A stretch of 64,000 bases of DNA from positions 1 to 64,000 of the forward strand of contig NIVC01000772.1 in NCBI GenBank assembly GCA_002269645.1, written 5' to 3'. Shown here one piece after another: positions 1-34,415 of this stretch; within the stretch, counting starts at the first letter, position 1, and each line of letters opens with the position of its first letter. A program made the position numbers and the translations under genes. The stretch comes from Macrostomum lignano. Its lineage: Eukaryota. Under the pieces are notes generated by a model, which had not been told where the DNA came from, did not search any database, and saw nothing but the letters and a program-made list of their open reading frames with translations.

Positions 1-103
1 GTTTATGTGGAAATGCATTTGTGGAAGTACACCGCATGTGCTGTAGTACGCACTAGGCGAGACGCCAAAACTTCGGTTTTTAGTAAAGTGCAGTAAATGC
101 ATC

Positions 104-463
104 GTAGCACGATATTTATATGCAGTTCATCGAGGGCACTGTAAATAGGGGGAAGGAGATCGGTACATCCATTACACTACTGTCTTAAATGCTGCGTCGA
201 AATGCGACAGATGTATAGCTGTGCAAGATAAGACGTGCGTGGGAGACATGGAAACAAGAAAGGATGACCGGTATGTCAAAAGTAATATATATGGAGAAAA
301 ACTGGCACTGTTGCTGTGCGCACGTGGCAGGACGCCAAAACCGCACTGTCATACTGTACAGTAAATGCATAAATGCAAGGTAGCACGATATTTATATGCA
401 GTTCATCGAGGGCACTGTAAATAGGGGGAAGGAGATCGGTACATCCATTACACTACTGTCTTA
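104..463. repeat. 84-bp direct repeat pair (104-187 and 380-463)
   Basis: GTAGCACGATATTTATATGCAGTTCATCGAGGGCACTG...CACTACTGTCTTA occurs twice. Confidence 0.9.
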
Positions 464-480
464 TGCTCACGTCATCACTG

Positions 481-2660
481 TCACCGCCCCATATTGGCTA
501 GCTCCGGCAAATCAATGCGCAGATGAATGTCACGATTTTTGTTCACGACGGCAGCGGCGTGGTGCCACATTTCAATGTTACTCGTGGGCAGTTCCGTCCA
601 ACGGATGTAAACTTCCAACAGGCTCGGGCATTCCCTGGCCAGCAGCGTCAGACAGTCCGGCGTAACGGCGGTGCCATCGAGCCACAGCCAGTTAAGGCTG
701 GTCGCGACGGAACAGGTGCACAGACGCGATAGACTGCCATCGTCGAGGCTGGGGCAGTTTGCGAGCGTCAGTTCGAGCATTGCAGCAGAGGCGTGGTCGG
801 CTGGACGAATACCTGCAGGAGGGAGAGTCTCCCAGGCTTTGCCCGTCACCAGCCGACAGTCCAACAAGTGCAGGCACTGCAGCTGTGGCAGCGTGAGTAA
901 CAGACAGGCCACGAGACTGTCGTCGCAGGCGGGCCACGAGATAGTCACGTGAGTCAGGCCTGCGTACGGATGGAGAAGTGTACATAGTAGCGTCCAGTGT
1001 GCAGTGTGTAGGTCTAGAGCGGAGGCGTGCGCACCATACAGGATGAACATGCATGCCTCATAAAGACTAAGACTAACGTCACGTGCATGCACATTTGTGC
1101 GTCAAATGTAATATGCACCACACTCACCACGACATCCGCCGAGAGCGGTCGCGAATGCAGGCTCACCGACCCTGATCCCGCAAGCTTCGTCGGTGGGCGT
1201 GACGTAAAGCTGCAGCACTCGTAGCGACGGAGGTAGCCGAGTGCCACGGAAAACGTCGGCAGACCCGGCTGGCGCGTCCGGACTGGCAGCTATCTGGTAT
1301 CTCAGCCGCGTCAAGTCGGGCAGCTCCTGGCAGGCCAACCGGAAGCCCTCCGCGCCCAGACTGAGGCAGTGGACGAGGCTTAGGCTTTGGAGCCCAGGCC
1401 AGCACTTCAGCAGTTGCCGCAGGCCCCACACGGTCAGCTTGTCGCCTGCGTCCAGATGCAGGTGACGCAGGTTGGCGCCCTTGAGGCCGACTCGTGCAGC
1501 AATTTGACCGGCGATGGCATCCGTGACGACCTGGCTGTGCACGGTCAAGCGCTGTAGCTGGTCTCCCTGCCCGCTGATGATGTCGAGCAGCACTGAGAGA
1601 TAAGGAAGGGTGCATTTCGTCGTTAAAACGCATTCATTATTTAGAAAGAAATTAATGGTTGCACACAATTCCCGGAGAAGGCCTATACGTAATTACTAAG
1701 CCCACTACGAAGTGACTATTTTTAAATGGATTGTAACAACATGCCTCGTGTAGCCCTGGCCGGAGACGGGGATGCCGGCGGGTCTAGGGTGACCTCACGC
1801 AGCCGGGTGAAGCGGCACCAGCCTGTAGCGATGGCCGCTGCTACGGGACCAGCTGAAGTGGCAAGCATGTCTGCGCGGACATGCAACACCTGTAGGAATG
1901 CCGGAGAAGGGGGGGGTGAAGTTAATAATATTAATACATAGACAGCCATCTCGACTAAAAGGACTGTGCCATGTGACATGAGAACGTATGTGACATGGGT
2001 CATATGACCTTACTGTTTGAGCAATTATACATGCCGTATTACCTGTATGCGGCCCAGCAGTCGGCAAAAGGGTGCAGCGCACTGTGCGACGTCGCCACCA
2101 AAGATTTCCTCGCCGTCTGTCAACAGCTCCAGCTTCTCCAGTCTGGGACAACCGTCGCTCAGACTGGCCAGCGCCTCCGGGTTGAAGATGCCTGGGCATT
2201 CTGCCAATGATAGCTCCCGCAGTTGTAGGCAACTGCGACCAGCCACCGTGAGGAGGTTTGGGCCGCCGGTGTACTGGCCCATGTCCAGCAGGCGGAGCGT
2301 ACGCAGCTCGCCGCAGCGCAGAAGGAGCGTGGCAGCGCGGTCGATGGCGATCGCGCTAGGCGGCTCGAACACGGTGCCCAAATCTAACTCTTTCGCCGCC
2401 GTCGCCAAGGTCATGAGCCGTGCCGCTGTGCTGTAGTCGTCCAGTGCAGTGGCGGTGACAGGCAGTCTCTCCCACAACACTGGTGCGCGGACGACGTCTG
2501 CCCAACGGCGGCATACTTGTGCGCACACCAGCCGAGTGGGTACCGTGAGGTGCTGCAACACCTGCATGAGCAACTCCGACGGCAGCACGTCAATGGTAGG
2601 TGGGGCACGGCCGGTCGATGACTGCATCGCTCGGCAGTTCGGCGGAGCTGTAATCCACAT
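481..2660 (-). CDS. F-box/leucine-rich-repeat protein (FBXL-like), about 568 aa, 4 exons
   Basis: F-box motif LPSELLMQVLQHLTVPTRLVCAQVCRRWADVV followed by repeats such as LRELSLAECPGI, LQSLSLVHCLSL and LELTLANCPSLDD. Phase-consistent exons are 2660-2043, 1889-1745, 1592-1128 and 959-481. The intron 2 donor would be GC and the start codon is uncertain. Confidence 0.85.
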
Positions 2661-3562
2661 GCGAGGGACGGGGTTCAAATAAACTTGATTACTGTATTAA
2701 TGCAGTACTGCAGTAATGGATTAATGCAGTACCGTAAGTTGTACGGTAGGTTCATGTGCAGTTCAGCTTTTGTTGTTGTTGCTTTTAGGGAGAAGTCGTA
2801 CGAGAAAATGGAGCAATTCCTGTACTAATTTGTAGTAGTAGTAGTTGTTGTTGTTTCTGCACAATATGTTTTACACTATATTCGAAGACATGCAAAACAT
2901 GGACAGCTGCCGTATACCGTGCAAGAGAAACAAGGAATAGGAAGTTCCGTGAAGTCGTTTCAATTCTTAAAATAACGAGACGTGCAGCAGGTGAAGTAGA
3001 GTGAACAGCGGTTGGGAGCGGTGTATTTAACAGACAGTACAAGAATAGTATAAGTAACCCAAACAAAAGTTTACAGACAGTAATATTACGTAATAGTATA
3101 GGCACTTATGCACTACATACAGCACATCGCTATATACACAATAATAACATTCTTATACTAGCTGCAGTATTCATGCCACACTATATACAACGTTGTTATA
3201 TGCTAACAATATTCTTTCCTTCGAAATGCAATCTAGCCAGCAGGCCTAAAGCAGACAAAAACCAAAGCTAAGCCCCTGCACACAGGCCTACAGTGGACAG
3301 ATTATGAACAGTTAATGACTTTTCCTTTTCCCTTGTCTCTTTCATGGCCTTCCCCGTACTTCCAGATGTCACAATGCAACAAGTCAAACAAAAGCATTAA
3401 GAAGAGACAGCAGAGAGGCCGACAGCAGAAGCAGGTGATGACAGTAGTCGTCCGGAAGGCAGTTGTGGTGGCCTGGGGTCTGGCGGGACGGCTCCCCGGG
3501 CTACCCCTGCTTTAGAGGAGCTCCAACTCCTACCCGCAACCCCTGACTGCTCTTTATCTCTT

Positions 3563-3564
<2 letters not shown>

Positions 3565-3606
<42 letters not shown>
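3565..3606. repeat. (TC)n microsatellite
   Basis: Direct reading of the sequence. Confidence 0.95.
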
Positions 3607-3608
<2 letters not shown>

Positions 3609-3758
3609 TCTTCATCCCAAGACCCAGCCGCTCTTCCCGAGACCCAGACCCGGCCACTACGGCCCCAAGACCCAAGACCCAGCCCCCATGCCTGCTGAGG
3701 CCTGTTCTAGTGCGTTACTCACTGTTGGACTTGAGGGGGCCGAGACCCCATAAATATA

Positions 3759-4140
3759 CTAGCCTTGGGAGCCTTCGCTCCCAAGGTTCGTCTCTCTCTG
3801 TTTGTGCCCATGCATCGGGAAGCCATTTCCCCTCTGGCGATACTGCCTTAGAATCCTACCGTGTTCCGACTTCATACACAAGTCATGAAAGCAGTCCTGC
3901 AGAACGATGGGCGCATAGGCAATCAGCCATATTTCGGATTCGTGCCCACGGAACTTCTTCAGCTCGCGCAGTGTGCGCGTTCCACGCAGTTCAACGCTAC
4001 GGAATCCGCCCTGCAGGGCAGATTCAGACCCAAGAATCTGCCCTGCACAGCAGATTCCTTTTAGGCAGAAAAAATTCAATGGAATCCGCGACGATTCCAC
4101 AAGGAATCGCACCAGGAATCCGTCATATTTCCCAGCGGGA
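3759..4140 (-). mobile_element. Putative non-autonomous Helitron-like element, 382 bp
   Basis: On the minus strand it begins A|TC (4140) and ends with a perfect 10-bp hairpin (CCTTGGGAGC-GAAG-GCTCCCAAGG, 3763-3786) immediately followed by CTAG|T (3759), i.e. an insertion between A and T with no TSD. Internal GGAATC/GATTCC repeats lie near the 5' end. Confidence 0.55.
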
Positions 4141-4614
4141 TATAGGGGACAGATATATCTATAGACATGTAGCTACGGATCACTGGTAGATACTTGCCAT
4201 TGTCTGAGTAAATATAATATGCAGACGTACAAAAGGCGTAAACTAAGAGGTACGATAAAGTACGATAAAGAGGTACGATTAAAGAGGTACGATAGACAGC
4301 TGATGAAAGTTACACATCTTCGTGCATATTACGTTGTCATATATATATACTCGTCCTTGAAGGTGGCCATTGGAAATACAGATCGAGAAAAGTGACAAAC
4401 ATGGCTAAATATATGCACAGAATAGAAGCAGTGCCGATCAGGGACAGCAGCAGCGGAGGTGTACACACTGATCTACACACTTGTCCTCGTCGGAGTAAAT
4501 GTGAGAATACGGGATGGACAGAAGTCGGGCTGCGGACAGTCGGAGACACTAGACATGGATTGCAGTTGTCTGACACACTTGTTCGGCAAATCTTCGGCAC
4601 TTGCCGCCCGCCCA

Positions 4615-7600
4615 CTAGGCGGCGAAGGAGGTTTGCACGTGCGGGAGGAAAGCTATGTGGGTGTCAGTTACACAGCATGTGCCAAGCACGTCCACCACGG
4701 GGAGACAGAAGTGCATGCCGCCGATGTCGCCGAATGGGTTGTCGACGACGCGCTGAATGTGCCTCAGTCGGCAGCCGTCGTTCTGTGCGACGCCCGAGAT
4801 GTAGTATTCCGGGTCCAGAAGGCAGACGGTACGAAGGCGACGCACCATCAGGATTGCAGTCCCGCGGGTGGGGGACCTGCGGATGGCGTCGACGCGACCG
4901 AAAGCCAGTTGGACACCGTCGTCACTGGCGGCGAAGGCGACGAAGCAGCACAGGGACCGCTGGTGCTGTAGCGCGGGCAAGTAGCGCTCAATGCGCCATC
5001 CGTTGGTCAACAGAGCCCAGCGGAACTCGTCGTCATGTAGCTTGGTGTACACCCTGGTCCCGTCGGCCATGGTCTCTTGGACACCCTGAAGGAATCCACG
5101 GGCCGCAAAGGGCGAGGCCAGGCCCAACTGGTGCATGACGGCACGCCTGCTGAATTGCCGTCTGATGGCAGAGTGCACCTGAGTGAAATGAAGGGTGGGA
5201 GGCGCCCGTTGCAAGTTAGGTAACGGTCTGATGCAGCAACGCAAGCCCTCGGAGGGGAACATGGTATCAAGGGGGAACCTTTGTAATTATATATACCACG
5301 ATAACCCAGGGGTGGGTTTCTAGTGCGATACAAGAGTGGGCATCCTGCATACGTACTGACTACTAGTGAGTAGAATATAGAGGCGTAGATGCCATTATAC
5401 TATATTTTTCTAATTAGAGAAAAGGGTCTCTCTGCGTACCTGATCACCGACGAACCTGGCGCCCTTGACGCGCGTTTTGAGGCCGTAGTGCAGAGACTCG
5501 AACAGGCCGGCGGAGGTGCGCCACACGGGTCCGAAGAGAAAGGCTGCGGGAACGAGGTGCTCACAGACCTGGTGGGCATTGTAGGTCATGGCGGCCGGCG
5601 AAAACCCATCCTTCAGGCTGGCGTAGAATACTCGCAGGGTCTTCGCTGCACGAGTAACTTCCGTCAGCGGGCAGTTCTCCAGAGACAGCCAGAAGATGGA
5701 AGAGGACAGGAGCAGCAGTTGATTGTAATAGAACGGTCCCAGCGTGTCGCCGAGAACCATGGGGCCGTACACCAACAGCCAGCACTCAAATTCGTGCCCG
5801 CGGAAGTGGCCGAGGTCCGCCAGGGTGCGAGGGCCCCGCTGGTGCGACGCAGGCACTCGAATACTGGCCGCCTTGGCGTCCACTTCAGCCACATGGCGGG
5901 ACAAGTCCGGGTTCTCGGCCATCTTGTCAGGTCGCTTGCCGACGGGCAGAAAGTGCTGCCGCAGCAGCCAACCGACAACGCCGACGAGGCACTGATGGAG
6001 GTAGCAGGGCGGGCAGGAGGTGATGAAGTCGAAGCCCTGCAGCCGATGAAGAGGAGACAGCCTGACGACGCCGAGGTTGTGGCCTGCGCCCGCCGGAATC
6101 GTGGTCGCCAGGAGGATGGTGTCCTGCAATGCCCGGTACCGCGGCCGTGTGCAACCGGCGTCGGATGCTGCTTGCAGCGCGTCGGCCGAAAGCTCGCATG
6201 GGAAAATGCGCGCATTTCCTCCGCGGTCGGCATCATGGAGAGTCACGGTGTAACAGTGATCGCAGCCGTACACTGCTGAGCAGTGCTGTAACCCAGTCAC
6301 CTCAACCCTCTGAGGCGCGTCAAGCACGAAGAGGAGCGGATGGAAGCGGATGCAGCCGCCACGCGTGCCGTCTCGTCCACCACCTGTGCGGAACATAACA
6401 CCCTCGATGCGAAGGCTGTTCAGCTGGGCCACCAGCCACGGCAGGAAGGCGTCCACGCTCACCTTGTTCCTGCAGGCCCACAGAGCGCAGACCACCGTGA
6501 AGCGCGCTCGCATGTGGTCGGGGACCTCATTCACGGTAAGGTACACGGGGCAGATGTTGTACACCGCCCGGCTGAACACGGAAAATGCATCGATGTTGAC
6601 CGTGACCGTCAGATCTGAGCGAGCGGCCTTGTCAATGAGGTGCGTAAAGGCCGAGTATGCCGTGCTTTGCCACAAGCTCAGACCACCCGGCCGCCGCGTG
6701 ACGTCCGCGGGGAAGGAGACGACCGACAACAGGCCGCAGCGCTCAATGAGCTGCCGTAGCTGGGCTCGCACATCCATCCGCCAGACCTTGGCGACGCGGT
6801 CCACTGACGAAAACTGCTTTCCGCAGGGTTCGCAGGTCAGTGGAAGGGCCTCCTCCACCAGGGGCCGGCTGCACCTAGGACAAAAAAGAAGTCGTTCGGA
6901 GCGCAGGGAGTTGCAGGACTCCAGAAACCGTCGCAGGCGGTACGGGTTGTCGGCAAACACGGCGTCTGGGGGAAGCGCGAGCTTCGTGTAAAGCAGCAGG
7001 TCCGCCGTGGCGTTTCGCGACAACTTGTGCTTCTCGGCTAGGAGCTCTCCGTACACTGCCAAAGTGGCGTATGACAGGTGCGGCATTGTGCGATGCACCG
7101 GTTGCAGAAACCCTGGCGCGATGTGAACGACGCCGTCGTCGCCGCCATGGGCTGCCCCTTCGTCGACAGCACCGCTAGCACCGCCAGCCCCGTCGCCAGC
7201 ACCGCCAGCCCCGTCGCCAGCACCGCCATCACCGTTGACACTGTCAGCGGATTCCTCGATGACGTCGTCCCATAGCGCACCCTGGCGGATGGAAGAGAAA
7301 GGGTAGGAAGGGGAGGAAGGAGGGAATCATAACTAGATTGGTTCTAGGCAGCCGATGAACATTGCGTGCTTAAGTTTGCTGAGTGCTAACTGATATTTGC
7401 AGGCAGGATCACATCAGCCACGTATACGCACGAGTGCCAGCCTTCAACAGTACAATGCAAGCCTTACGTCATCACCGTCATCATCAGACGTCGCATCGCT
7501 GGGGTCAGGACTGCGGTCGGATCCGCGGCCAGAGGCTCCATCGGAGCTGCGGTCAGACCCACGTTCGGAGTCGCAGTCGGATCCGCGGCCAGAGGCTCCA

Positions 7601-8178
7601 TCGGAGCTGCGGTCAGACCCACGTTCGGAGCCGCAGTCGGATCCGCGGCCAGAGGCTCCATCGGAGCTGCGGTCAGACCCACGTTCGGAGCCGCAGTCGG
7701 ATCCGCGGCCAGGGGCTCTATCGGAGCTGCGGTCAGACCCACGTTCGGAGCCGCAGTCGGATCCGCGGCCAGGGGCTCTATCGGAGCTGCGGTCAGACCC
7801 ACGTTCGGAGCCGCAGTCGGATCCGCGGCCAGAGGCTCCATCGGAGCTGCGGTCAGACCCACGTTCGGAGCCGCAGTCGGATCCGCAGCCAGGGGCTCTA
7901 TCGGAGCTGCGGTCAGACCCACGTTCGGAGCCGCGGTCGGAACTGCAGTCAGAGCTAGAGCTGAAAAGCTCAGCAGGACCGTCAGATGAGGCAACACCAC
8001 CGGCATCGTCCTCGTCATGGTTAGCTGCACCTTGCATCGAACTAGATGCTGCGGCTTGGCCAAACTGCAGCACACGCATGCACTTACTTGCAGCTGCAGC
8101 TGCACGCCGATCGGACCGACAGACTGCCTCCAGCTTTCTCTTACGGTCGCGCGCTTTGATATGTTTGGCAAAGTCCAT
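4615..8178 (-). CDS. CMC/CACTA-type DDE transposase, about 1038 aa, 3 exons
   Basis: Exons 8178-7468, 7281-5440 and 5178-4615 are all phase 0 with GT-AG introns. Motifs: N-terminal basic patch RDRKRKL, CPRC...CEPC finger, NIDAF (D), VLDAP (D), YGCDHC, CYLH, FRGHEFECWLL, YNAHQVCEHL and FES (E). Confidence 0.9.
7513..7945. repeat. 60-bp exonic tandem repeat (about 7 copies) in transposase exon 1
   Basis: Unit GAGCCGCAGTCGGATCCGCGGCCAGAGGCTCCATCGGAGCTGCGGTCAGACCCACGTTCG; read on the minus strand it encodes SDCGSERGSDRSSDGASGRG. Confidence 0.95.
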
Positions 8179-8465
8179 TGCCACGAAGACTTTTGGCAGC
8201 TGGCTGAAATGCGCTAGAGGATATGCGCATGGGAGACATGTCAGATGGTATTGCGAAACTACAGCTTTAAAAAATATCCATGTTGTTGGATTGTCTTTCA
8301 AGTTGTCTAAAGCCATACGTATCATCAATACATGCTCTATGCCCCATGCTCCTATGCTCTAGATCTATACATGCCATTAGAACACCCTTTCTACTGAGAC
8401 AGTCCCAGTCCCGTTCAGGACCCAAGTGTATGATGTAAAAGCTGTATTGCATAAGTCTTACTGTC

Positions 8466-8655
8466 AAAGTCTCACAAAGTCCTACGAAGAGTCACACAAA
8501 GTCCTACAAAGTCTCACAAAGTCCTACAAAGAGTCTCACAAAGTCCTACAAAGAGTCTCACAAAGTCCTACAAAGAGTCACACAAAGTCCTACAAGGGGC
8601 TACAAAATCCTACAAACAGAACTACCACAAAGTCGTACAAACTGTTACAAAGTCA
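8466..8655. repeat. Degenerate ~22-bp minisatellite CACAAAGTCCTACAAAGAGTCT upstream of the transposase
   Basis: Direct reading of the sequence. Confidence 0.85.
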
Positions 8656-8929
8656 TGTCGGTAGTAGCCTTTGCTCACAACCTGAATTCATGGCAATATC
8701 TGCTACATCTCTGTACGACTTCTATCCGCCAATGCCGTATAACGTTTGCAACAAAATCAATGAAGGGTCGCTATGAATCGAAACGTCGCATATTGAAGCG
8801 TGGGCTTTGTTGGATACTTTAGCCAATGCAGTTCCTGATTTATTTTGTGTGGGACACTTTTGCCAAAATAGCATGAAATTAGACGCATAGAAAATTAAGA
8901 GAACATGGGGACAGATAAAGACATATCGA

Positions 8930-9180
8930 CAGTGCCGACGGGTAGTGCCGACGAGCAGTGCCGACGGGTAGTGCCGACATGTCGGCACTACTGGGCAGTG
9001 CCGACGAGCAGTGCCGACGGGTAGTGCCGACGGGCAGTACCGACGGGTAGTGCCGACAGTCGGCACTACCCGGTCGGCACTCAGTGCCGATACTGAGTGC
9101 CGATCGGCAGTCAAATCGACCCTGACTGCCGACAGGCAGTGCCGATCGGCACTCGGAGTGCCGACGGATTTTCAATCGGG
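8930..9180. repeat. Subterminal repeats and terminal sequence of the CACTA-like element
   Basis: More than 15 copies of AGTGCCGA(C) and its reverse complement GTCGGCACT in direct and inverted orientation, stopping at 9180. Confidence 0.8.
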
Positions 9181-9872
9181 CTGACGATGTGAGCTAAATT
9201 TGACCATGTGAAATGAAAATTTGGCGAAATAGCGCTTATGGCACTTGATGCAGGAGCTGAGACTGGCTGACAGATGATCTCGGGCCCACGTCCCTGAGTT
9301 CGATTTCTGTGCCAAAAGGCCACATTTAATATTGAATAATTTTGAGTTCATCAACGGTAATTTAAACCCTAAAAACATATACAGCATTGGGTCTGGCTTC
9401 AATCAGAAGCAATTAGAAATTTTGTGCTGAATTTTGTGCTGAATTTTGTGTGGAATCGAACTAGGGGTCGTTGTGCGAGAGTCAGTGTTTATCACAGAGC
9501 TGCTCTGCCCCCCCCCTAAGTAACTAGTTATGTATCAATTTTTCTAAATTTAATTTACGCTTAATTAACATTTCCTATGGGCCTCTGATTTTTCTGAAGC
9601 TTTGCAACTGCAATTCCTCTTTTTGCAGTTTTTCTACCGCGACATACAGGTAGTGGATAATAACACTAGGAGCAACAGACACTATATGATTCTGAACAAC
9701 ACAGGGCACTATGAGCGACTCACGCAGTATTTGGCTGACAATAAGGCAATTTTTGGCGGAGTTATTGAGTCAGCCAAATGTTCTGACAGAGTCAGGTGAG
9801 GTCTGTTTTAGATTTTTTAATTTCAAAGCTGTACTCTAGTTTCTTAATCCCATGTTTTGTCAGTTCCTTTTT

Positions 9873-11425
9873 CCCTAGTTCCCTACTTACCTAGTTCCCT
9901 AGTTCCCTAGTTCCCTAGTTCCCTAGTTCCCTAGTTCCCTACTTACCTAGTTCCCTAGTTCCCTAGTTCCCTAGTTCCCTAGTTCCCTACTTACCTAGTT
10001 CCCTAGTTCCCTAGTTCCCTAGTTCCCTAGTTCCCTACTTACCTAGTTCCCTAGTTCCCTAGTTCCCTAGTTCCTTAGCTCCCTAGTTCCTTAGTTCCCT
10101 AGTTCCCTAGTTACCTAGTTCCCTAGTTCCCTAGTTCTTTAGCTCCCTATTTCCCTATTTCCTTAGTTCCCTAGCTCTCTAGTCCTCTTATTCCCTAGTT
10201 CCCTAGTTCTCTATTTCCTTAGTTCCTTAGCTCTCTAGTCCCCTTATTCCCTAGTTCCCTAGTTCCCTAGTTCCCTAGTTCCCTAGTTCCTTAGCTCCCT
10301 AGTTCCTTAGTTCCCTAGTTCCCTAGTTCCCTAGTTTCCTAGTTCCCTAGTTCTTTAGCTCCCTATTTCCCTATTTCCTTAGTTCCCTAGCTCTCTAGTC
10401 CTCTTATTCCCTAGTTCCCTAGTTCTCTATTTCCTTAGTTCCTTAGCTCTCTAGTCCCCTTATTCCCTAGTTCCGTAGTTCCGTAGTTCCCTAGTTCCCT
10501 AGTTCCCTAGTTCCTTAGCTCCCTAGTTCCTTAGCTCCCTAGTTCCTTAGTTCCCTAGTTCCCTAGTTCTCTAGTCCCCTTATTTCCTAGTTCCCTAGTT
10601 CCCTAGTTCCCTAGTTCCCTACTTACCTAGTTCCCTAGTTCCCTAGTTCCCTAGTTCCCTACTTACCTAGTTTCCTAGTTCCCTAGTTCCCTAGTTCTCT
10701 AGTCCCCTTATTTCCTAGTTCCCTAGTTCCCTAGTTCCCTTGTCCCCTTATTCCCTAGTTCCCTAGTTCCCTAGTTCCCTAGTTCCCTACTTACCTAGTT
10801 TCCTAGTTCCCTAGTTCCCTAGTTCCCTTGTCCCCTTATTCCCTAGTTCCCTAGTTCCCTAGTTCCCTTGTCCCCTTATTCCCTAGTTCCCTAGTTCCCT
10901 AGTTCCCTTGTCCCCTTATTCCCTAGTTCCCTAGTTCCGTAGTTCCGTAGTTCCCTAGTTCCCTAGTTCCCTAGTTCCCTAGTTCCCTAGTTCCCTAGTT
11001 CCCTAGTTCCTTAGCTCCCTAGTTCCTTAGCTCCCTAGTTCCTTAGTTCCCTAGTTCCCTAGTTCTCTAGTCCCCTTATTTCCTAGTTCCCTAGTTCCCT
11101 AGTTCCCTAGTTCCCTACTTACCTAGTTCCCTAGTTCCCTAGTTCCCTAGTTCCCTAGTTCCCTACTTACCTAGTTCCCTAGTTCCCTAGTTCCCTAGTT
11201 CCCTAGTTCCCTACTTACCTAGTTCCCTAGTTCCCTAGTTCCCTAGTTCCCTAGTTCCCTACTTACCTAGTTCCCTAGTTCCCTAGTTCCCTAGTTCCCT
11301 AGTTCCCTACTTACCTAGTTCCCTAGTTCCCTAGTTCCCTAGTTCCCTAGTTCCCTAGTTCCCTAGTTCCCTACTTACCTAGTTCCCTAGTTCCCTAGTT
11401 CCCTAGTTCCGTAGTTCCCTAGTTA
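9873..11425. repeat. 8-bp satellite (CTAGTTCC)n filling a DEG/ENaC intron
   Basis: Direct reading; includes CTACTTAC and related variants. Confidence 0.97.
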
Positions 11426-12021
11426 GCCAGTTTCCTACTTCTCTGTTCACTTGCTTCCTAGATCCATTGTCCCTGTTTCCATAAATCCCAAGTTCCCTAG
11501 TCGTCTCAGTTAGGAGTTAATTTTCGGTCAAAGCTTTTCTGGTATTCCTGATAAAAACGGAACAGGCTCGTACGCTGCTGTCTCATTGCGCAGGCACCGC
11601 CAGAACACGGCTGGCGTGAGCGCTGCCGTGGCCTCCTGCAAAATGCTCTGCAATGTGAACCAGTACAACGTATTCCCAGACAGAGTGCCCTGGCCATCGA
11701 ACCTGAAATTGGCCGAGTTCATCATCCACGGCATTGGCAGACGGCGCAAAATCCATTTGAAGTCGCAGAACATCACTAGCAAGGTGGTTCAGAATCTGAT
11801 TGGCAGAACGCTGCACGTCATAAATAACCCGTCAATTAGTGTAGTGGATTTGTACCCAATCAGCACGAAGGCCACTGTGACTTCCGAGGCTCTGGCCTAC
11901 GAGTTGCGCAATCTATTCTCAGATCTGGGCGGAATTCTCGGTAAATTATAAGCAGTTTTGGCTTTTCGAGAATTGCTCAATTTTAAAATGTTTTGAAAAC
12001 ATTAATGTTTTAAGGGTCGTG

Positions 12022-12029
12022 ACGGACAG

Positions 12030-12092
<63 letters not shown>

Positions 12093-12119
12093 GGCAGACA
12101 GACAGACACTAAGACACTA

Positions 12120-12211
<92 letters not shown>
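12022..12211. repeat. (GACA)n microsatellite
   Basis: Direct reading of the sequence. Confidence 0.97.
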
Positions 12212-14270
<2,059 letters not shown>

Positions 14271-21644: not shown

Positions 21645-22682
21645 ATGGTAGACAAAGACAAGCAGAGAGTCTTCTGCACACCTGGCTTCGGCACGTTCGG
21701 CTCGATGATCGACTTGGGCCTGGACCTGGAGCCGCTGAGGAACCGGATTCGCGAATGCAAACTGCGCTACCACCGCGAGCTGTGGAGCATCATCTGCGAC
21801 TTGGGCATTCAGGGCGGCGACTCTGGCTGGAAGAAACGCGACGACGACGAGGGCGGCGGCGAAGGCGGCGGCGAAGGAGGCGGCGATGGCGGCGGCGATG
21901 GCGGTGGCGAAGACGGCGGCGAAGGCGGCGGCGATGGCGGTGGCGAAGGCGGCGATGACGGCGGCGATGGCGGCGGCGAAGGCGGCGGAGATGACGAGGG
22001 AGACGAGGCCAACCAGAGCAACATCAGAGCGATTCGCAATCGCAACAGGTCCAATGCGGCGGCCAATTTCGGGCGTAATTCTTTTCAAAGATCTTCGACT
22101 GCTCTGAGACAGCAGCGGCAGCAGCAACAGCAGCGGCAGCAGCAGCGGTTGCCACCAAAGCAGCAGCAACAGCAGTATCAACAGCAACAGCATCGGCAGA
22201 GGCAGCGACAGCAGCCTCAGTGGCCTCCGCAACAGCTTCAGCCGCAGTGGCCCCCGGCTCCACCGCTTCAGCAGCCTCAATGGCCTCAACAGCAGCCGCA
22301 GATTCTGCATCAGCAGCAGCCATGGCTTCCACCCAGCATTCCCGGTCCATCGGCCCCGCTAGTAATCGAAAATGCTAATTATTTGTCTCATGCTCGAGCG
22401 AAACTGCCTTCAGTCGGCAAGAGTGCCAGCAGAAGAGGTGGGGGAGGCGGCGGCGGCATCTGCAACGGCAGCTGCAGCAGCAGTTCGCTCACATCTGCCG
22501 ATGACGTCACAGGGTGCGAATTCTCCGAGCTGCCGGCCTTGCCGGACATCGAGTCAGCCCCGTCGTCATTGTTAGCCCAGTCGAAAAAGTTTGTGCCACT
22601 CCGTTGCGGCGATTGGTCGTCGCGTAAAACAAAAGAAACTGGCAGTGACCGGCGTCGGAAGCACGGCAAGCACAAGCACTGA
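21645..22682 (+). CDS. Putative low-complexity protein (G/E/D repeat, Q/P-rich, basic C-terminus)
   Basis: Open frame with a globular-looking N-terminus (LEPLRNRIRECKLRYHRELWSIICDLG), poly-CAG tracts like those of neighbouring genes, and a C-terminal RRRKHGKHKH. No family recognised and the 5' end is uncertain. Confidence 0.45.
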   Translation: MVDKDKQRVFCTPGFGTFGSMIDLGLDLEPLRNRIRECKLRYHRELWSIICDLGIQGGDSGWKKRDDDEGGGEGGGEGGGDGGGDGGGEDGGEGGGDGGGEGGDDGGDGGGEGGGDDEGDEANQSNIRAIRNRNRSNAAANFGRNSFQRSSTALRQQRQQQQQRQQQRLPPKQQQQQYQQQQHRQRQRQQPQWPPQQLQPQWPPAPPLQQPQWPQQQPQILHQQQPWLPPSIPGPSAPLVIENANYLSHARAKLPSVGKSASRRGGGGGGGICNGSCSSSSLTSADDVTGCEFSELPALPDIESAPSSLLAQSKKFVPLRCGDWSSRKTKETGSDRRRKHGKHKH

Positions 22683-25336
22683 TAATGAAAAAGCGACTGA
22701 ACCTCCGCGCTAAACTTGCCATGTACTTTCATTTTTCCTAAAACGTAATTAGTTAAAATTTTATTCTCTCCTTATAATAAGTATTTCTGCGAAATGAAAA
22801 AGGTGTCAGAAATCGTTAATTACTTCCATACTCTGATTTGCGAGCTTTCAACTTTGCGGACGAAAAAAGATATTACACCACTTATTGTTTTTTGACAATG
22901 TATACGTGCTCATATTCATTTTTGGCCAATTTCAAAACAAATATATTTTACGCTATTTTCTGCATTAAAACAAAAGACTTCTGATATGTCTGTATCATTG
23001 CGTCGTGGATCATTTTCTTATAGTTTGAGATATAGGTTTAGAAAATGGTATAATACGAATAGCCGATCGATAGATTGCAATACTCACATAATGAAGATAG
23101 CAATAACCATGCAGCTCGGCCAGATATTCGTTGACGAGTTTACCGGCACCCTTGAAAATACGCGGAAATTATAGTTTTTTTTCAAATGAAGATTGCATGG
23201 ACATAAAATTCTTGAAATAGGGTAGACTAAAAAACTGAAAAAGCAAAAAATGTGATGGGGAATAGCTCATAAGAGGACTAATGCGAAGTGTAACACAGAT
23301 TGTGAGTGCATTGAATTTATAGGTATTATGTACAGGAGTCAAGTGATCTGATCTGCTAGGGGATCAGTGGATGTAAGTTCTAATCGAAGGACGCTGTTGC
23401 TTGTGCAGTTTGGCAGGTTGAAAGAGAGCTTAAAAAGGACGTTTTTATTGCGTAACGATTTCTTTTATTTCAACATTGCTCGCAAGTGGTCGCCGTATTC
23501 CGCTTCATGATTAAAAAAATAATTTACGTTTGATTCAACGTTCATTTAACGCTCAATTATCGTGAATTTTTAAATGTGCGCATTTCTCTACAAGTTTTAA
23601 CTAAAAGAAATGTGAAATATTTAGAAATTTTTCTTACAGATGATATATTATTTACCAGAATAACTTTTTCGTACTTTAATTTTAATCTTAATTTGAAGAA
23701 ATGGCTGGCTTCCTTCCCGTAATAAAGTGCGTTTTTAAATTGCAAAAGCTGCCAAGTTAATCCAGCAATGAATTTCCCAGAATTGAATTGAGAAAATATG
23801 CGCCGTAAGTGTAGTAAAATAGTTTGAAGCTTACGAGCGGATGTCTGTTAGCCGCGCAATTAGTGACTAAAATTTTGTCAATAATTGCGATAAAAAGATT
23901 AAAAAATAACAATAAGAAACAAATAAAAACATATTATTTATTGTCTTATTGAAATACGAATTTTTGTTTACTTCGTATTGTATTGCACCATGAACACCAT
24001 TTTTATACGTGCTCATATTCATATGATAACCATTGATAACCATTGCACGGTCATTGACTCATCGCTCACACTTTTATTATAATACTTATAGAAATAGACT
24101 CAATAAAGTTGAAACATCAAATATGCACATTATGCAGTAGCATAGCCAGAATTTCCATCCTGACCTACTATGCAATAAAAACAAATTACTTTACTAGCGT
24201 TCGCATCAATTAGCCAGTATAATTATTCATAGCTTATAAACTTACTTTCTATAGCCTAGGCCTATTTAAAATAACAAAATCCTTATTTAGTAGCCAGGTT
24301 GCGGATGGTATGCATGTACGCCGGAACTTTTCTGGCATACAAAAATGGGGTTAAATGGCCACCCTAAGTCCTTGGCATACACAATCAGCATACACAACCC
24401 CTGGCGAAATTTATTGGTATACACTATTGGTGTACACAATAACAGCCATGCATACTTTTTTGGCGTACAAATTTTGGTGAATAAATTCATGCCATACATG
24501 AAAATTGTAATATAAATTAATGTTTTTATGTAAAGTAACGGAAAATTTATATCGTTAGTGATAAAATTTTTGCTTCTTTGTAATTAGCAATAAATAAAAC
24601 TAGTGTAAATTTTTGCTAAGAGTATCAATTTTGCATCATATTTTTTGTAGGTATAATTTAATTATACTAAATTAGTAGGCCTATCATTGGTGACAATTAT
24701 AGAGACTACTTTATAAACTCAAGACAAGTTAATATAATAGTATCTAATTATACCTAAGGTTTGATATTCAATTCTCAACTTACTTAGAATAATTTGTATC
24801 TTCAGGAAAGACAGGAACTTGTACCTTTCTGCATTGCTTTGGTTTACTTAGTTATAAAATAGGTAATACAATTAACTAGGATAATTGAGAGCATATGTGG
24901 TGACCCCCCTTCCCCTAGTCTTTATACTATATAGCTATGTATAGGTAGCCTTTAGATACATTGCACAAAAACTATAGCTAAGTTGGTTACATATCTAGCC
25001 TATTTGGGGTAGTTATAATCATACTATATTGAAAAGAAATATGTATTATAATTATATAAGACTAAGAGTGTTTTTAGTTTGAAAATCAACAATATCTACT
25101 TTAAAATTGAAAAAATAAATATTCTAAGCAACAAATAAACTACTTTTATTGTTTAATTAAAGAAATTAAAAATAAAAATATTCTAATAATAATACGTAAA
25201 ATAAGAGCAATATGGCTTAGGGCCTATATAGTGTGTACTTTGTTATATGCATACTAATAAGGATGCCAACAAGGTTTATTATTAGGTTTTAAAAAGAAGA
25301 AATGAAAATGTACATAACCAAGTATAAAAATAAATA

Positions 25337-33477: not shown

Positions 33478-34415
33478 CCCAATCCCAATTATCCCAATAT
33501 TAGAAATCCCAGATCCCAATTATCCCTTTATTAAAAATCTCAGATCCCAATAATCCCTATATTTTTAAATCCCAGATCCCAATTATCCCTATATTGAAAA
33601 TCCAAGATCCCAATAATCCCAATATTTTTAAATCCCAGATCCCAATTATCCCTATATTGAAAATCCAAGATCCCAATAATCCCTATATTGAAAATCCCAG
33701 ATCCCAATTATCCCAATATTGAAAATCCCAAATCCAAAATTATCCCTATATTGGAAATCCCAGATCCCAATTATCCCAATATTGAAAATCCCAGATCCAA
33801 AATTATCCCTATATTGGAAATCCCAGATCTCAATTATCCCTATATTGGAAATCCCAGATCCAAAATTATCCCTATATTTTTAAATCCCAGATCCCAATTA
33901 TCCCTATATTGAAAATCCAAGATCCCAATAATCCCAATATTTTTAAATCCCAGATCCCAATTATCCCTATATTGAAAATCCAAGATCCCAATAATCCCTA
34001 TATTGAAAATCCCAGATCCCAATTATCCCAATATTGAAAATCCCAAATCCAAAATTATCCCTATATTGGAAATCCCAGATCCCAATTATCCCAATATTGA
34101 AAATCCCAGATCCAAAATTATCCCAATATTGAAAATCCCAAATCCAAAATTATCCCTATATTGGAAATCCCAGATCCCAATTATCCCAATATTGAAAATC
34201 CCAGATCCAAAATTATCCCAATATTGAAAATCCCAAATCCAAAATTATCCCAATATTGAAAATCCCAGATCCAAAATTATCCCAATATTGAAAATCCCAG
34301 ATCCAAAATTATCCCAATATTGAAAATCCCAGATCCAAAATTATCCCAATATTGAAAATCCCAGATCCAAAATTATCCCTATATTGGAAATCCCAGATCT
34401 CAATTATCCCAATAT
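33478..34415. repeat. ~32-bp AT-rich minisatellite (AAAATCCCAGATCCAAAATTATCCCAATATTG)
   Basis: Direct reading of the sequence. Confidence 0.95.

What the first reader, a model, noticed from the sequence alone, without database searches (positions are those of the whole stretch)
1..9180. Large CACTA-like transposon apparently carrying a spliced F-box/LRR cargo gene
Seen: an intact transposase and, 2 kb downstream on the same strand, an intact four-exon F-box/LRR gene with similarly short introns. The terminus lies at 9180, and neither a matching left terminus nor an AGTGCCGAC cluster occurs between the two genes or anywhere in 1-4600. Established: F-box/LRR proteins are SCF E3-ligase substrate adaptors, and CACTA elements capture genes in plants. 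Inference: this is an autonomous animal CMC element of at least 9 kb that encodes its own ubiquitin-ligase adaptor, possibly to degrade a host silencing factor or to regulate its own transposase. This is the best candidate for an undescribed system in the window.
Basis: partly seen in the sequence, partly recalled or inferred. Interest (0 to 1): 0.85.

Follow-up and report, generated by a model that had tools for sequence, protein, structure and literature searches.

The report
Active flatworm transposon carrying F-box gene
The first 9.2 kb of this Macrostomum lignano contig is part of a very young, roughly 14-kb cut-and-paste DNA transposon that moves a complete, transcribed F-box/LRR gene (a ubiquitin-ligase substrate adaptor) along with its transposase; what that gene does for the element has not been tested.

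Summary
The window is the start of M. lignano contig NIVC01000772.1, and the contig end cuts the element. Complete copies elsewhere in the same assembly are 12.7-14.5 kb. They have a 14-bp TIR (CCCGATTGAAAATC), AGTGCCGAC/T arrays at both ends and 3-bp target-site duplications (CAG, TTA, ATC, ATT). There are six independent loci, and one of them duplicates the window's own locus. Every copy carries, on one strand, a three-exon transposase, the four-exon F-box/LRR gene and a third gene that lies outside the window (CxxC, coiled coil, BEN-like domain). The transposase joins the CMC clade through its homologues (Pfam Transposase_21), the C(2)C and H(4)H motifs and the 3-bp TSD, but its termini are CCC...GGG, not CAC. 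The copies are almost identical (no substitutions in the F-box coding sequence among seven copies), so dN/dS cannot be measured. Two related elements place the third gene directly after the transposase with no F-box gene, so the F-box gene is a lineage-specific acquisition. Whether it serves the element, for example by sending a host factor to SCF, or is a passenger remains open. This is a new variant of a known kind.

The parts
9181..9183 (.). 3-bp target-site duplication (CTG on the + strand, CAG in element orientation)
   Evidence: The same triplet flanks both ends of the duplicate locus L004. Other loci have TTA, ATC and ATT.
9167..9180 (-). Terminal inverted repeat, 14 bp, CCCGATTGAAAATC (the transposase-proximal end)
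   Evidence: Unique in the window. The same 14-mer in inverted orientation forms the other end of L001, L002, L003, L004, L005 and L009.
8931..9165 (.). Subterminal array of the 9-mer AGTGCCGAC/T in both orientations, roughly 13-bp spacing; presumed protein-binding sites
   Evidence: 12 exact copies against 0.34 expected. TRF finds period 13/26. A longer array of the same motif lies at the far end of complete copies (L001 22369-22883). Array length varies between copies.
8179..8930 (-). Upstream region of the transposase gene, including a 22-bp tandem array (8465-8654) and a 3' splice acceptor at about 8214, which suggests an untranslated leader exon or trans-splicing
   Evidence: The GenBank model P0001 starts as 'partial' just after the acceptor.
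4615..8178 (-). Transposase gene, 3 exons (8178-7468, 7281-5440, 5178-4615), 1038 aa. Exon 1 holds 7 copies of a 60-bp repeat (7516-7941) that encodes an acidic Ser/Asp/Arg-rich tail. There is a CxxC...CxxC zinc ribbon (C371, C374, C387, C390). Catalytic D468 (6591), D558 (6321) and E832 (5499); C577-x2-C580; H807-x4-H812.
   Evidence: 3105 homologues in the representative library. 23 of 36 aligned homologues match Pfam PF02992 Transposase_21.
4095..4455 (.). 363-bp spacer segment present in the window, L004 and L005 but deleted in L001 and L003, and mostly deleted in L002 and L009
3894..3986 (-). Relic fragment of a related transposase (RGTRTLRELKKFRGHESEIWLIAYAPIVLQD, 61% identical to residues 627-657 of P0001), in the spacer 630 bp after the transposase stop codon
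   Evidence: tblastn E=1.7e-7; translation. It lies in the 1-kb segment missing from the mobile deletion derivatives L002 and L009.
481..2660 (-). F-box/LRR gene, 4 exons (2660-2043, 1889-1745, 1592-1128, 959-481), 568 aa. The F-box is at residues about 23-66, followed by about 16 beta-strand/helix repeats.
   Evidence: Exact translation to P0163. Pfam PF12937 E=4e-13 and PF00646 E=4e-10. PDB phmmer: FBXL2 1.4e-5, SKP2 3.7e-5. AF2 model plus Foldseek: top hits FBXL2, COI1, FBXL17, D3, TIR1. The gene model is transcript-based (PMC5730564).
1..480 (-). 3' flank of the F-box gene, with two roughly 94-bp direct repeats about 270 bp apart (window about 85-178 and 361-454). The contig starts here, inside the element. 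Complete copies continue for another 5.1 kb (inner TIR-like relic, nested MITE, third gene, far subterminal array and TIR).

Best explanation
Shown (about 0.95): window 1-9180 is the transposase-proximal two thirds of an autonomous, recently active CMC-clade DNA transposon of Macrostomum lignano. The full element is about 14.3 kb, with 14-bp TIRs, 3-bp TSDs and arrays of a 9-mer at both ends. It carries three co-oriented, transcribed, spliced genes:
- a DDE transposase (the counterpart of En/Spm TnpD);
- a complete F-box/LRR protein;
- a CxxC, coiled-coil, BEN-like protein that is conserved next to the transposase in related elements. I infer that this protein is the sequence-specific binder of the subterminal 9-mers (the counterpart of TnpA).

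The F-box gene sits between the two core genes only in this family. It was therefore acquired by this lineage, and the whole unit, F-box gene included, is what transposes.

Inferred (about 0.45): the F-box protein works as an SCF substrate receptor for the element. Its canonical F-box would dock on host Skp1-Cul1, and its LRR solenoid would select a host protein that limits transposition (a silencing, chromatin or repair factor) for ubiquitination. This would parallel the way viral F-box proteins act. A role in turnover of the element's own proteins is a less likely variant.
For: Element structure and mobility:
- Both termini, both arrays and matching 3-bp TSDs are found at L004 (CAG), L005 (TTA), L002 (ATC) and L009 (ATT).
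- The flanks of the six loci are unrelated, except that L004 matches the window.
- Only 71 variable columns occur in a 14.8-kb six-copy alignment.
- A 12.7-kb deletion derivative sits at two different loci with different TSDs, so it moved after the deletions arose.

Autonomy:
- The window and L004 have intact 1038-aa transposase ORFs with all catalytic and motif residues.

CMC clade:
- Homologues at E=1e-35 or better match PF02992, DUF4218 or Plavaka.

F-box gene:
- It lies inside the TIRs in all seven copies and is retained in both size variants.
- The F-box is canonical (LPSELL...VCRRW...LW) and scores above the Pfam threshold.
- The fold matches FBXL-type receptors.
- The GenBank model comes from RNA-seq-based transcript assembly.
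- The only protein at E<=0.001 in a 5.8-billion-protein collection that includes the M. lignano proteome is the transposon-borne cluster itself. No parental host gene is detectable. A 568-aa, four-exon ORF with regular repeats has therefore been kept open while diverging from every known F-box protein.

Lineage-specific acquisition:
- Sister family L007 (41% identical transposase) and the marine relative L008 (34%) place the BEN-like gene 0.5-1 kb after the transposase with no F-box gene.
Against: - No test of selection is possible. The F-box coding sequence has zero substitutions among seven copies, so its intactness in these copies says nothing.
- Related elements manage without an F-box gene, so it is not needed for the transposition chemistry.
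- The element tolerates junk: a nested 486-bp MITE, a relic transposase fragment and an inner TIR-like relic. A passenger origin is therefore plausible.
- The homologue search was word-limited (8000 candidates), so a distant host parent could have been missed.
- The transposase itself gives no direct Pfam hit, and the termini are not CA...TG.
- The structure model is single-sequence (pLDDT 59).
- Several copies show 1-nt gaps in the transposase, and L001 shows them in the F-box gene. These may be real frameshifts or long-read assembly errors.
- L001 has no matching TSD.
- The BEN assignment of the third gene is sub-threshold.
Confidence: 0.5

Rival explanations
1. Passenger gene. The F-box/LRR gene was captured from host DNA or from another element, for example by aberrant excision of two neighbouring related elements as proposed for Pack-CACTA. 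It is co-mobilised and transcribed but does nothing for the transposon, and it looks intact only because the family amplified very recently.
For: - Copies are virtually identical, so intactness is uninformative.
- The F-box gene is absent from the sister family and from the marine relative.
- The 5.5-kb interval between the two core genes also holds a relic of a related transposase, and an inner right-end-like sequence CCCGATTGAAATTTC whose first 11 bases are exact; by my own estimate the chance of that in 14 kb is about 0.007. This is what a fusion of two elements would leave.
- A nested MITE shows that extra DNA is tolerated.
- CACTA elements and Drosophila telomeric retrotransposons are known to pick up gene pieces, including F-box gene fragments (PMC13317346, PMC13534243).
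Against: - Captures by DNA transposons are usually fragments. Here a whole gene is carried, with start and stop codons, three introns, an F-box and a full LRR solenoid.
- No parental or related host gene is detectable, although the host proteome is in the searched collection. An old neutral passenger would be expected to have decayed, and a recent one to have a recognisable parent.
- Both mobile size variants lost 1.3 kb and 0.8 kb on either side of the F-box gene yet kept it.
Confidence: 0.4
2. Self-regulation. The F-box protein targets the element's own transposase or BEN-like protein for degradation and so limits transposase dosage. The long acidic Ser-rich repeat tail of the transposase would be a phosphodegron-like target.
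For: The transposase N-terminus carries seven 60-bp repeats that encode SDRGSERGSDRSSD-type Ser/Asp-rich units. Such sequences could be phosphodegrons (established knowledge: many FBXL and FBXW substrates are recognised after phosphorylation). Repeat copy number varies between copies.
Against: This is pure inference with no data here. Self-limiting functions are hard to select for in a selfish element. The sister family has the same kind of acidic N-terminal tail (P0003-P0006) without an F-box gene.
Confidence: 0.07
3. Not one element: either two unrelated repeats that happen to be adjacent, or a segmental duplication or assembly redundancy rather than transposition.
For: The Mlig_3_7 assembly is known to be redundant (180 Mb in duplicated blocks; PMC5730564). 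The window and L004 are such a duplicate pair. L001 lacks a TSD.
Against: Five further loci have unrelated flanks. The similarity stops exactly at the TIRs. Four loci have perfect 3-bp TSDs of different sequence. No inverted-repeat pair brackets the F-box gene alone, and no copy ends between the genes.
Confidence: 0.02

Closest known systems
En/Spm (CACTA) transposons of plants, the founding CMC family
   Same: A large element with 3-bp TSDs, short TIRs and arrays of a short motif in both subterminal regions. A tnp2-type DDE transposase (TnpD) works with a second element-encoded protein that binds the subterminal motifs (TnpA; established knowledge). Here, homologues of the transposase match Pfam Transposase_21.
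   Different: The host is an animal (a flatworm). The termini are CCCGATTG...CAATCGGG, not CACTA...TAGTG. The genes are separate transcription units rather than alternative splice forms. The second protein is BEN-like and unrelated to TnpA. There is an extra complete F-box/LRR gene.
Chapaev and other animal CMC elements
   Same: Animal hosts; 3-4-bp TSD; DDE transposase with the C(2)C and H(3-4)H motifs (PMC4079192, PMC12730594).
   Different: Chapaev has invariable 5'-CAC...GTG-3' termini, which this element lacks. Chapaev elements are usually small, single-gene elements. Phylogenetic placement among EnSpm, Mirage and Chapaev was not done here.
Fungal DNA transposons that carry TET/JBP dioxygenase genes (Kyakuja-Dileera-Zisupton, Plavaka, EnSpm, hAT and others)
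   Same: These are autonomous cut-and-paste elements, some in the CMC(T) clade. Between their TIRs they carry a complete accessory gene for an enzyme that could act on host silencing. The gene was acquired independently in several lineages, sometimes together with a third protein (PMC12730594).
   Different: The accessory gene there is a DNA-demethylation enzyme, and the hosts are fungi. Here it is a ubiquitin-ligase adaptor in an animal.
VANDAL21/Hiun and its anti-silencing protein VANC (Arabidopsis MULEs)
   Same: A DNA transposon that encodes an extra protein which counteracts host epigenetic silencing of that same family (PMC5735166, PMC10398659).
   Different: VANC is a sequence-specific DNA-binding anti-silencing factor with experimental proof. 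Here the extra protein is an F-box/LRR protein with no functional data.
Viral F-box proteins (polerovirus P0, nanovirus Clink, poxvirus ankyrin/PRANC proteins); recalled from general knowledge, not tested here
   Same: A genetic parasite encodes its own F-box protein, plugs it into host Skp1-Cul1 and redirects ubiquitination to host defence or cell-cycle proteins. This is the mechanism proposed here.
   Different: Those are viruses. Their substrate-binding parts are not FBXL-type LRR solenoids (P0 has none, and poxviruses use ankyrin repeats). No sequence relationship to this protein was found.
Cellular FBXL proteins (FBXL2, SKP2, FBXL17; plant TIR1, COI1, D3)
   Same: An N-terminal F-box followed by a Cys-containing LRR solenoid. 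These are the best sequence matches (E=1e-5) and fold matches (Foldseek E=4.5e-12 to 1e-9).
   Different: Identity is only 13-18%. No orthologue could be assigned. All known copies of this gene lie inside the transposon.
Gene-fragment capture by TEs (Pack-CACTA, Pack-MULE; Drosophila telomeric retrotransposons carrying F-box gene fragments)
   Same: Host-derived sequence is mobilised inside a TE. One Drosophila case involves fragments of an F-box gene (PMC13534243). The two-element aberrant-excision model (PMC13317346) could explain the relic transposase piece and the inner TIR-like sequence seen here.
   Different: Those cases are fragments, usually in non-autonomous elements. Here a whole, spliced, transcribed gene is carried by the autonomous element.

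Membership tests
CMC (CACTA-Mirage-Chapaev) transposon clade | Transposase homologous to the tnp2/En-Spm transposase family | tested here: met
   Met only transitively. P0001 and its ORFs give no direct Pfam hit. However, 23 of 36 homologues found at E<=1e-22 match PF02992 Transposase_21 (best 1.6e-14), 3 match DUF4218 and 1 matches Plavaka.
CMC (CACTA-Mirage-Chapaev) transposon clade | [quoted passage not shown] | tested here: met
   D558...C577-x2-C580...H807-x4-H812...E832 in the window protein. These columns are invariant in a 36-sequence alignment.
CMC (CACTA-Mirage-Chapaev) transposon clade | Short TSD (2-5 bp in the clade; 3 bp for EnSpm, 3-4 bp for Chapaev) | tested here: met
   Perfect 3-bp TSDs at four loci: CAG, TTA, ATC and ATT.
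CMC (CACTA-Mirage-Chapaev) transposon clade | Termini 5'-CAC(TA)...GTG-3' ('invariable' in Chapaev; 5'-CA..TG-3' 'in most cases' in the clade) | tested here: not met
   The termini are 5'-CCCGATTG...CAATCGGG-3' in all copies. The definitions come from PMC4079192 and PMC12730594.
CMC (CACTA-Mirage-Chapaev) transposon clade | Placement in a particular subgroup (EnSpm, Mirage or Chapaev) by transposase phylogeny | not tested
   No labelled reference transposases (Repbase) were available. 16 of 36 homologues also match the nematode family DUF1258, which was not followed up.
En/Spm-type architecture | Arrays of a short motif in both subterminal regions | tested here: met
   AGTGCCGAC/T: 12 exact copies at window 8931-9165. 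In L001, arrays at 9068-9276 and 22369-22883 give 53 matches against 5.3 expected.
Autonomous, currently or recently active element | Intact transposase ORF with catalytic residues; near-identical copies at different loci with TSDs | tested here: met
   (the window and L004 are intact). Actual excision or integration activity cannot be tested with these tools.
F-box/LRR (FBXL-type) SCF substrate receptors | F-box domain above the curated threshold | tested here: met
   PF12937: 49.3 bits against a cut-off of 24.3, covering 44 of 47 profile positions. PF00646: 39.6 bits against 20.5.
F-box/LRR (FBXL-type) SCF substrate receptors | C-terminal leucine-rich-repeat solenoid | tested here: met
   No Pfam LRR model passes; only LRR_At5g56370 appears, at E=0.0022 and below its cut-off. 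Other evidence is positive: PDB phmmer matches to FBXL2 and SKP2 run through residues 15-169; the AF2 model shows about 16 strand/helix repeats (pTM 0.60, pLDDT 59); the top Foldseek hits are FBXL2, COI1, FBXL17, D3 and TIR1.
F-box/LRR (FBXL-type) SCF substrate receptors | Binds Skp1 and assembles into an SCF ligase with a defined substrate | not testable with these tools
   This needs a binding or ubiquitination assay.
BEN-domain proteins (for the third gene, outside the window) | Match to the BEN domain model | tested here: inconclusive
   The family-2 homologue matches PF10523 at E=0.0028, 18.3 bits against a cut-off of 23.2. The family-1 protein matches that same stretch only pairwise (E=0.002-0.007), as does the L008 ORF. 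Its structure could not be predicted, because sequences from outside the window are not accepted.

The most novel reading that the evidence does not exclude
The F-box/LRR protein is a transposon-encoded counter-defence effector. It hijacks the host SCF ubiquitin ligase to destroy a component of the flatworm's transposon-silencing machinery (for example a PIWI-pathway or heterochromatin factor) or a repair or cell-cycle factor. This would be the first cellular DNA transposon shown to use the strategy known from viral F-box proteins, and it would explain the family's very recent burst.
Probability: 0.2. Interest if true: 0.85.

Novelty: new variant of a known kind. Interest (0 to 1): 0.6.

Why it matters
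Few transposon-encoded proteins are known to act on the host rather than on the transposon's own DNA. Known or proposed cases are VANC in Arabidopsis and the TET/JBP genes of fungal elements, and none of them is a ubiquitin-ligase adaptor. I found no report of a complete F-box/LRR gene carried by an autonomous DNA transposon in the literature searches that could be run here.

Viruses repeatedly evolved F-box proteins to destroy host defences. An active animal transposon doing the same would extend that arms-race strategy to transposons.

The element is young. It has intact copies and lives in a flatworm with RNAi, transgenesis and a well-studied germline and stem-cell system, so the idea can be tested directly.

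On the practical side, the family seems to have escaped the repeat annotation of the reference genome. Its three genes are listed as ordinary host genes (Mlig033474, Mlig022939 and a 605-aa protein), which matters for anyone using those gene models.

Tried and rejected
- Direct Pfam classification of the transposase gave no hit, even at E<=10. This was solved through homologues.
- PDB sequence search with the transposase found nothing meaningful.
- The word-indexed homologue searches returned only the self clusters, for the transposase ORF, for the F-box protein and for a five-sequence transposase alignment. The third search was in effect wasted, probably because low-complexity words swamped the candidate list.
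- P0003 could not be looked up by exact sequence. Its cluster member P0152 could.
- A metagenome scan for further relatives, run to look for more F-box associations, found none.
- dN/dS among copies is impossible, since the F-box coding sequence has zero substitutions.
- My first F-box gene model (557 aa) used a wrong intron-2 donor and a wrong intron-3 acceptor. It was replaced by the transcript-based model P0163, which the window encodes exactly.
- The idea that the 363-bp and 1-kb indels are nested insertions was rejected. The alignment shows nested, overlapping deletions of a longer ancestral form.
- The idea that a discrete nested TE carries the F-box gene was rejected, because no TIR pair brackets it.
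- A TIR of the sister family could not be identified from one locus, and this was not pursued.
- L001 has no TSD (flanks CAG and TCA). I take it to be a recombinant between two copies or a mis-join. It was used only as a coordinate reference.

Full report
**Origin of the window.** The 562-aa ORF at 5410-7098 (minus strand) is 100% identical to a GenBank protein of the flatworm Macrostomum lignano (P0001, BOX15_Mlig033474g1). Locus L006, which is positions 1-12660 of contig NIVC01000772.1 (assembly GCA_002269645.1), aligns with the window in the same two blocks, with the same percentage identities to the reference copy, and ends at the same element position. The window is therefore the first 64 kb of that contig, and position 1 is a contig end.

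**Check of the observation.** Everything lies on the minus strand.
- The transposase gene has three exons (8178-7468, 7281-5440, 5178-4615) with canonical GT-AG introns of 186 and 261 bp. It encodes an uninterrupted 1038-aa protein.
- Exon 1 contains seven 60-bp repeats (7516-7941).
- The F-box gene starts 1955 bp downstream of the transposase stop codon. Its four exons (2660-2043, 1889-1745, 1592-1128, 959-481) translate exactly to the annotated 568-aa protein P0163. My own first model had two splice sites wrong.
- Pfam finds an F-box (PF12937 E=4e-13, PF00646 E=4e-10).
- PDB sequence matches to FBXL2 (1.4e-5) and SKP2 (3.7e-5) extend from the F-box into the first repeats.
- A single-sequence AlphaFold model of modest confidence (pLDDT 59, pTM 0.60) shows about 16 strand/helix repeats. 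Its best structural neighbours are FBXL2, COI1, FBXL17, D3 and TIR1.
- The 15-mer CCCGATTGAAAATCC occurs once in the window, at 9166-9180.
- AGTGCCGAC occurs 12 times, all in 8931-9165, against 0.34 expected.

**Finding the rest of the element.** Exact-protein look-ups returned the contigs that encode P0001, P0002 and P0163.
- The element sequence recurs at more than 99% identity in L001, L002, L003, L004, L005 and L009. In every case the similarity stops at the base corresponding to window 9180.
- In L001 the other end lies 13.85 kb away. It is an inverted CCCGATTGAAAATC preceded by a 500-bp array of AGTGCCGAC/T.
- Complete copies measure 14,292 bp (L004), 14,515 bp (L005), 13,854 bp (L001), 12,710 bp (L002) and 12,720 bp (L009).
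- Perfect 3-bp target-site duplications flank L004 (CAG), L005 (TTA), L002 (ATC) and L009 (ATT).
- The near end of L003 lies in an assembly gap. L001 has unmatched flanks (CAG and TCA).
- The left flank of L004 is 97% identical to window 9181-12606. L004 is therefore the allelic or duplicated version of the window's own locus, which fits the known redundancy of this assembly (PMC5730564).
- The flanks of the other loci are unrelated to each other.
- L002 and L009 share the same two internal deletions but have different flanks and TSDs. That 12.7-kb derivative has therefore itself transposed.

**Gene content.** All copies carry, in one orientation, the transposase, then the F-box/LRR gene, then a third gene (L001 19106-21312, annotated product 605 aa).
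- The third gene lies beyond the contig end and so outside the window. It encodes a CxxC motif, a coiled coil, a conserved C-terminal domain and a Gly/Ser/Thr-rich tail.
- The GenBank gene models of this assembly come from RNA-seq-based transcript assembly, after removal of transcripts that overlap annotated repeats (PMC5730564). The three genes are therefore transcribed and spliced as modelled.
- Because the copies are identical, the expressed copy cannot be named.
- The family evidently escaped the repeat annotation.

**Classification of the transposase.**
- Direct Pfam scans find nothing.
- A full HMMER scan of 1.84 billion representative proteins finds 3105 homologues.
- Of 36 aligned homologues, 23 match Pfam Transposase_21 (the tnp2/En-Spm family), 3 match DUF4218, 1 matches Plavaka and 16 match DUF1258.
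- Invariant columns are a CxxC...CxxC zinc ribbon, D558, C577-x2-C580, H807-x4-H812 and E832 (window numbering), with D468 nearly invariant.
[quoted passage not shown] The clade makes 2-5-bp TSDs and mostly has CA...TG termini (PMC12730594). Chapaev has 3-4-bp TSDs and invariable CAC...GTG termini (PMC4079192).
- This element meets the transposase, motif, TSD and subterminal-repeat criteria. It fails the terminal-nucleotide criterion, because its ends are CCC...GGG.

I therefore file it in the CMC clade as a family with non-canonical ends. I did not place it in a subgroup.

**Is the F-box gene ancestral to the lineage?** The closest relatives of the transposase are:
- a second M. lignano family (P0003 cluster, Mlig001703, 41% identity);
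- metagenome-derived proteins (P0004-P0006, 36-37% identity).

In the sister family (L007), a gene for a CxxC, coiled-coil, BEN-like protein starts 500 bp after the transposase. UniProt models even fuse the two. No F-box homologue lies within 10 kb on either side.

A 10.2-kb marine-metagenome contig (L008) is a nearly whole related element. It has inverted AAAACCGGA arrays at both ends, an intronless transposase (34% identity) and, 1 kb downstream, ORFs with the same CxxC, coiled-coil and conserved-motif layout. It too has no F-box gene.

The three downstream proteins align on the same motif (ALLRLLCREVFTEEEQLNCSFTGR / LIRKLLQALFTKEELQISSWSGK / FLRALMRSLVSDEEFSITNYSGRK), with weak but mutually consistent pairwise E-values of 0.002-0.007. 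The family-2 protein touches the BEN model just below threshold (E=0.0028).

The ancestral layout of this lineage is therefore transposase plus a BEN-like protein. I infer that the BEN-like protein binds the subterminal 9-mers, by analogy with TnpA of En/Spm. The 5.5-kb block between the two genes, including the F-box gene, is an addition specific to the window's family.

**How the F-box gene may have got there.**
- The spacer holds a 31-codon relic of a related transposase (window 3894-3986, 61% identical to residues 627-657, E=1.7e-7).
- Downstream of the F-box gene, outside the window, there is a sequence in right-end orientation that matches the TIR in its first 11 bases (L001 18241-18255). 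My estimate of the chance of that in 14 kb is about 0.007.
- A 486-bp MITE with an 8-bp TSD is nested nearby.
- These relics fit a fusion of two neighbouring related elements with the DNA between or within them, as modelled for Pack-CACTA elements (PMC13317346). I could not reconstruct the event.
- No inverted-repeat pair brackets the F-box gene alone.
- The size differences between copies are nested internal deletions of the longest form. This is usual for DNA transposons.

**Function.** Sequence evidence stops here.
- Seven copies have no substitution at all in the 1707-nt F-box coding sequence. The whole 14.8-kb alignment has only 71 variable columns, most of them in repeat arrays. The family is very young, and no test of selection is possible.
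- Points in favour of a working protein:
  - It is a complete four-exon gene with a canonical F-box and a regular solenoid.
  - It has transcript support.
  - Both mobile size variants keep it, although each lost DNA on both sides of it.
  - No other protein at E<=0.001 appears in a collection that contains the host proteome. The ORF must therefore have stayed open through a long divergence, and every known copy is transposon-borne.
- Points against:
  - Relatives transpose without it.
  - The element tolerates junk.
  - The homologue search was word-limited.

I put about 0.45 on "SCF adaptor that serves the element", most likely by sending a host restriction factor to degradation as viral F-box proteins do. 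I put about 0.4 on "neutral passenger", and a small share on self-regulation of the transposase, whose Ser/Asp-rich repeat tail could serve as a degron.

**Comparison with what is known, and novelty.** The transposon kind is known (CMC; En/Spm-like two-protein architecture). Autonomous DNA transposons with complete accessory genes aimed at the host are also known: TET/JBP genes in fungal Kyakuja-Dileera-Zisupton, Plavaka and EnSpm elements, and VANC in Arabidopsis VANDAL elements.

Four features appear to be new:
- a complete F-box/LRR gene as the accessory gene;
- an animal host;
- the CCC termini;
- the conserved BEN-like partner.

The literature searches possible here found only captures of gene fragments, including F-box gene fragments in Drosophila telomeric retrotransposons. 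They found no description of CMC elements in Macrostomum. Repbase could not be consulted, so the family may already be deposited there. My verdict is a new variant of a known kind. It is of moderate to high interest because the counter-defence reading can be tested in a tractable model animal.

Noticed in passing
window 9873-11417: Immediately outside the element's TSD lies a 1.5-kb satellite of the 8-bp unit CCCTAGTT (108 exact units). The same satellite flanks the duplicate locus L004, where it accounts for most of the 3% flank divergence.
   Followed up: partly
window 33589-34361: A tandem array with roughly 31/63-bp spacing whose units contain ATATTGAAAATCC. It surfaced only because it resembles the TIR at 3 mismatches. 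It is probably unrelated to the element.
   Followed up: no
L001 18500-18985 (element interior, beyond the contig end of the window): A 486-bp MITE with TIR CAGTGTTGGGCA and a perfect 8-bp TSD (CTTACTGA), which looks hAT-like. It is nested between the F-box gene and the third gene. The L002/L009 deletion removes its left part.
   Followed up: partly
L001 18241-18255: An inner sequence CCCGATTGAAATTTC in right-end orientation, matching the TIR at 13 of 15 positions with the first 11 exact. It is present in L001, L003, L004 and L005 and deleted in L002 and L009. It may be a relic terminus of a second, fused element.
   Followed up: partly
L002 4317-17026 and L009 4318-17037: Two copies share identical internal deletions (reference positions about 4697-5702 and 8797-9577) but sit at different loci with different TSDs (ATC, ATT). 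The 12.7-kb derivative, which still has all three genes, has therefore transposed.
   Followed up: yes
L009 3199-17431; L005 2667-21475: Two copies lie within the span of annotated host genes, one Rhomboid-domain gene and one neurotransmitter-gated ion-channel gene. These are intronic insertions that could serve as excision reporters.
   Followed up: no
L001 22782-23396 (minus strand): A gag-like ORF of a retroelement runs straight into the far end of the element. L001 is also the only complete copy without a matching TSD, so it may be a recombinant or a mis-join.
   Followed up: partly
window 1745/1744 (F-box intron 2): The transcript-based gene model uses a GC-AG intron (donor GCATGT). An in-frame GTGAGG donor 54 nt upstream would give an alternative 18-aa-shorter isoform.
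   Followed up: partly
L007 10001-15475 and UniProt models A0A1I8JBV9 etc. (P0003 cluster): A second, multi-copy M. lignano CMC family (Mlig001703, at least 12 clustered protein models). Some databases model its transposase and its BEN-like gene as one 1300-1800-aa 'C2H2-type domain-containing protein'.
   Followed up: partly
L008 1-10198 (Tara Oceans metagenome contig ERZ976238 k127_1411745): A nearly complete related element from an unidentified marine eukaryote. It has an intronless 863-aa transposase and inverted arrays of AAAACCGGA at both contig ends.
   Followed up: partly
window 7516-7941 and L001-L009 equivalents: The 60-bp repeat in transposase exon 1 (Ser/Asp/Arg-rich units) varies in copy number between otherwise identical copies. 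So do the subterminal 9-mer arrays (220 to 530 bp) and the Gly/Ser/Thr repeat of the third gene.
   Followed up: partly
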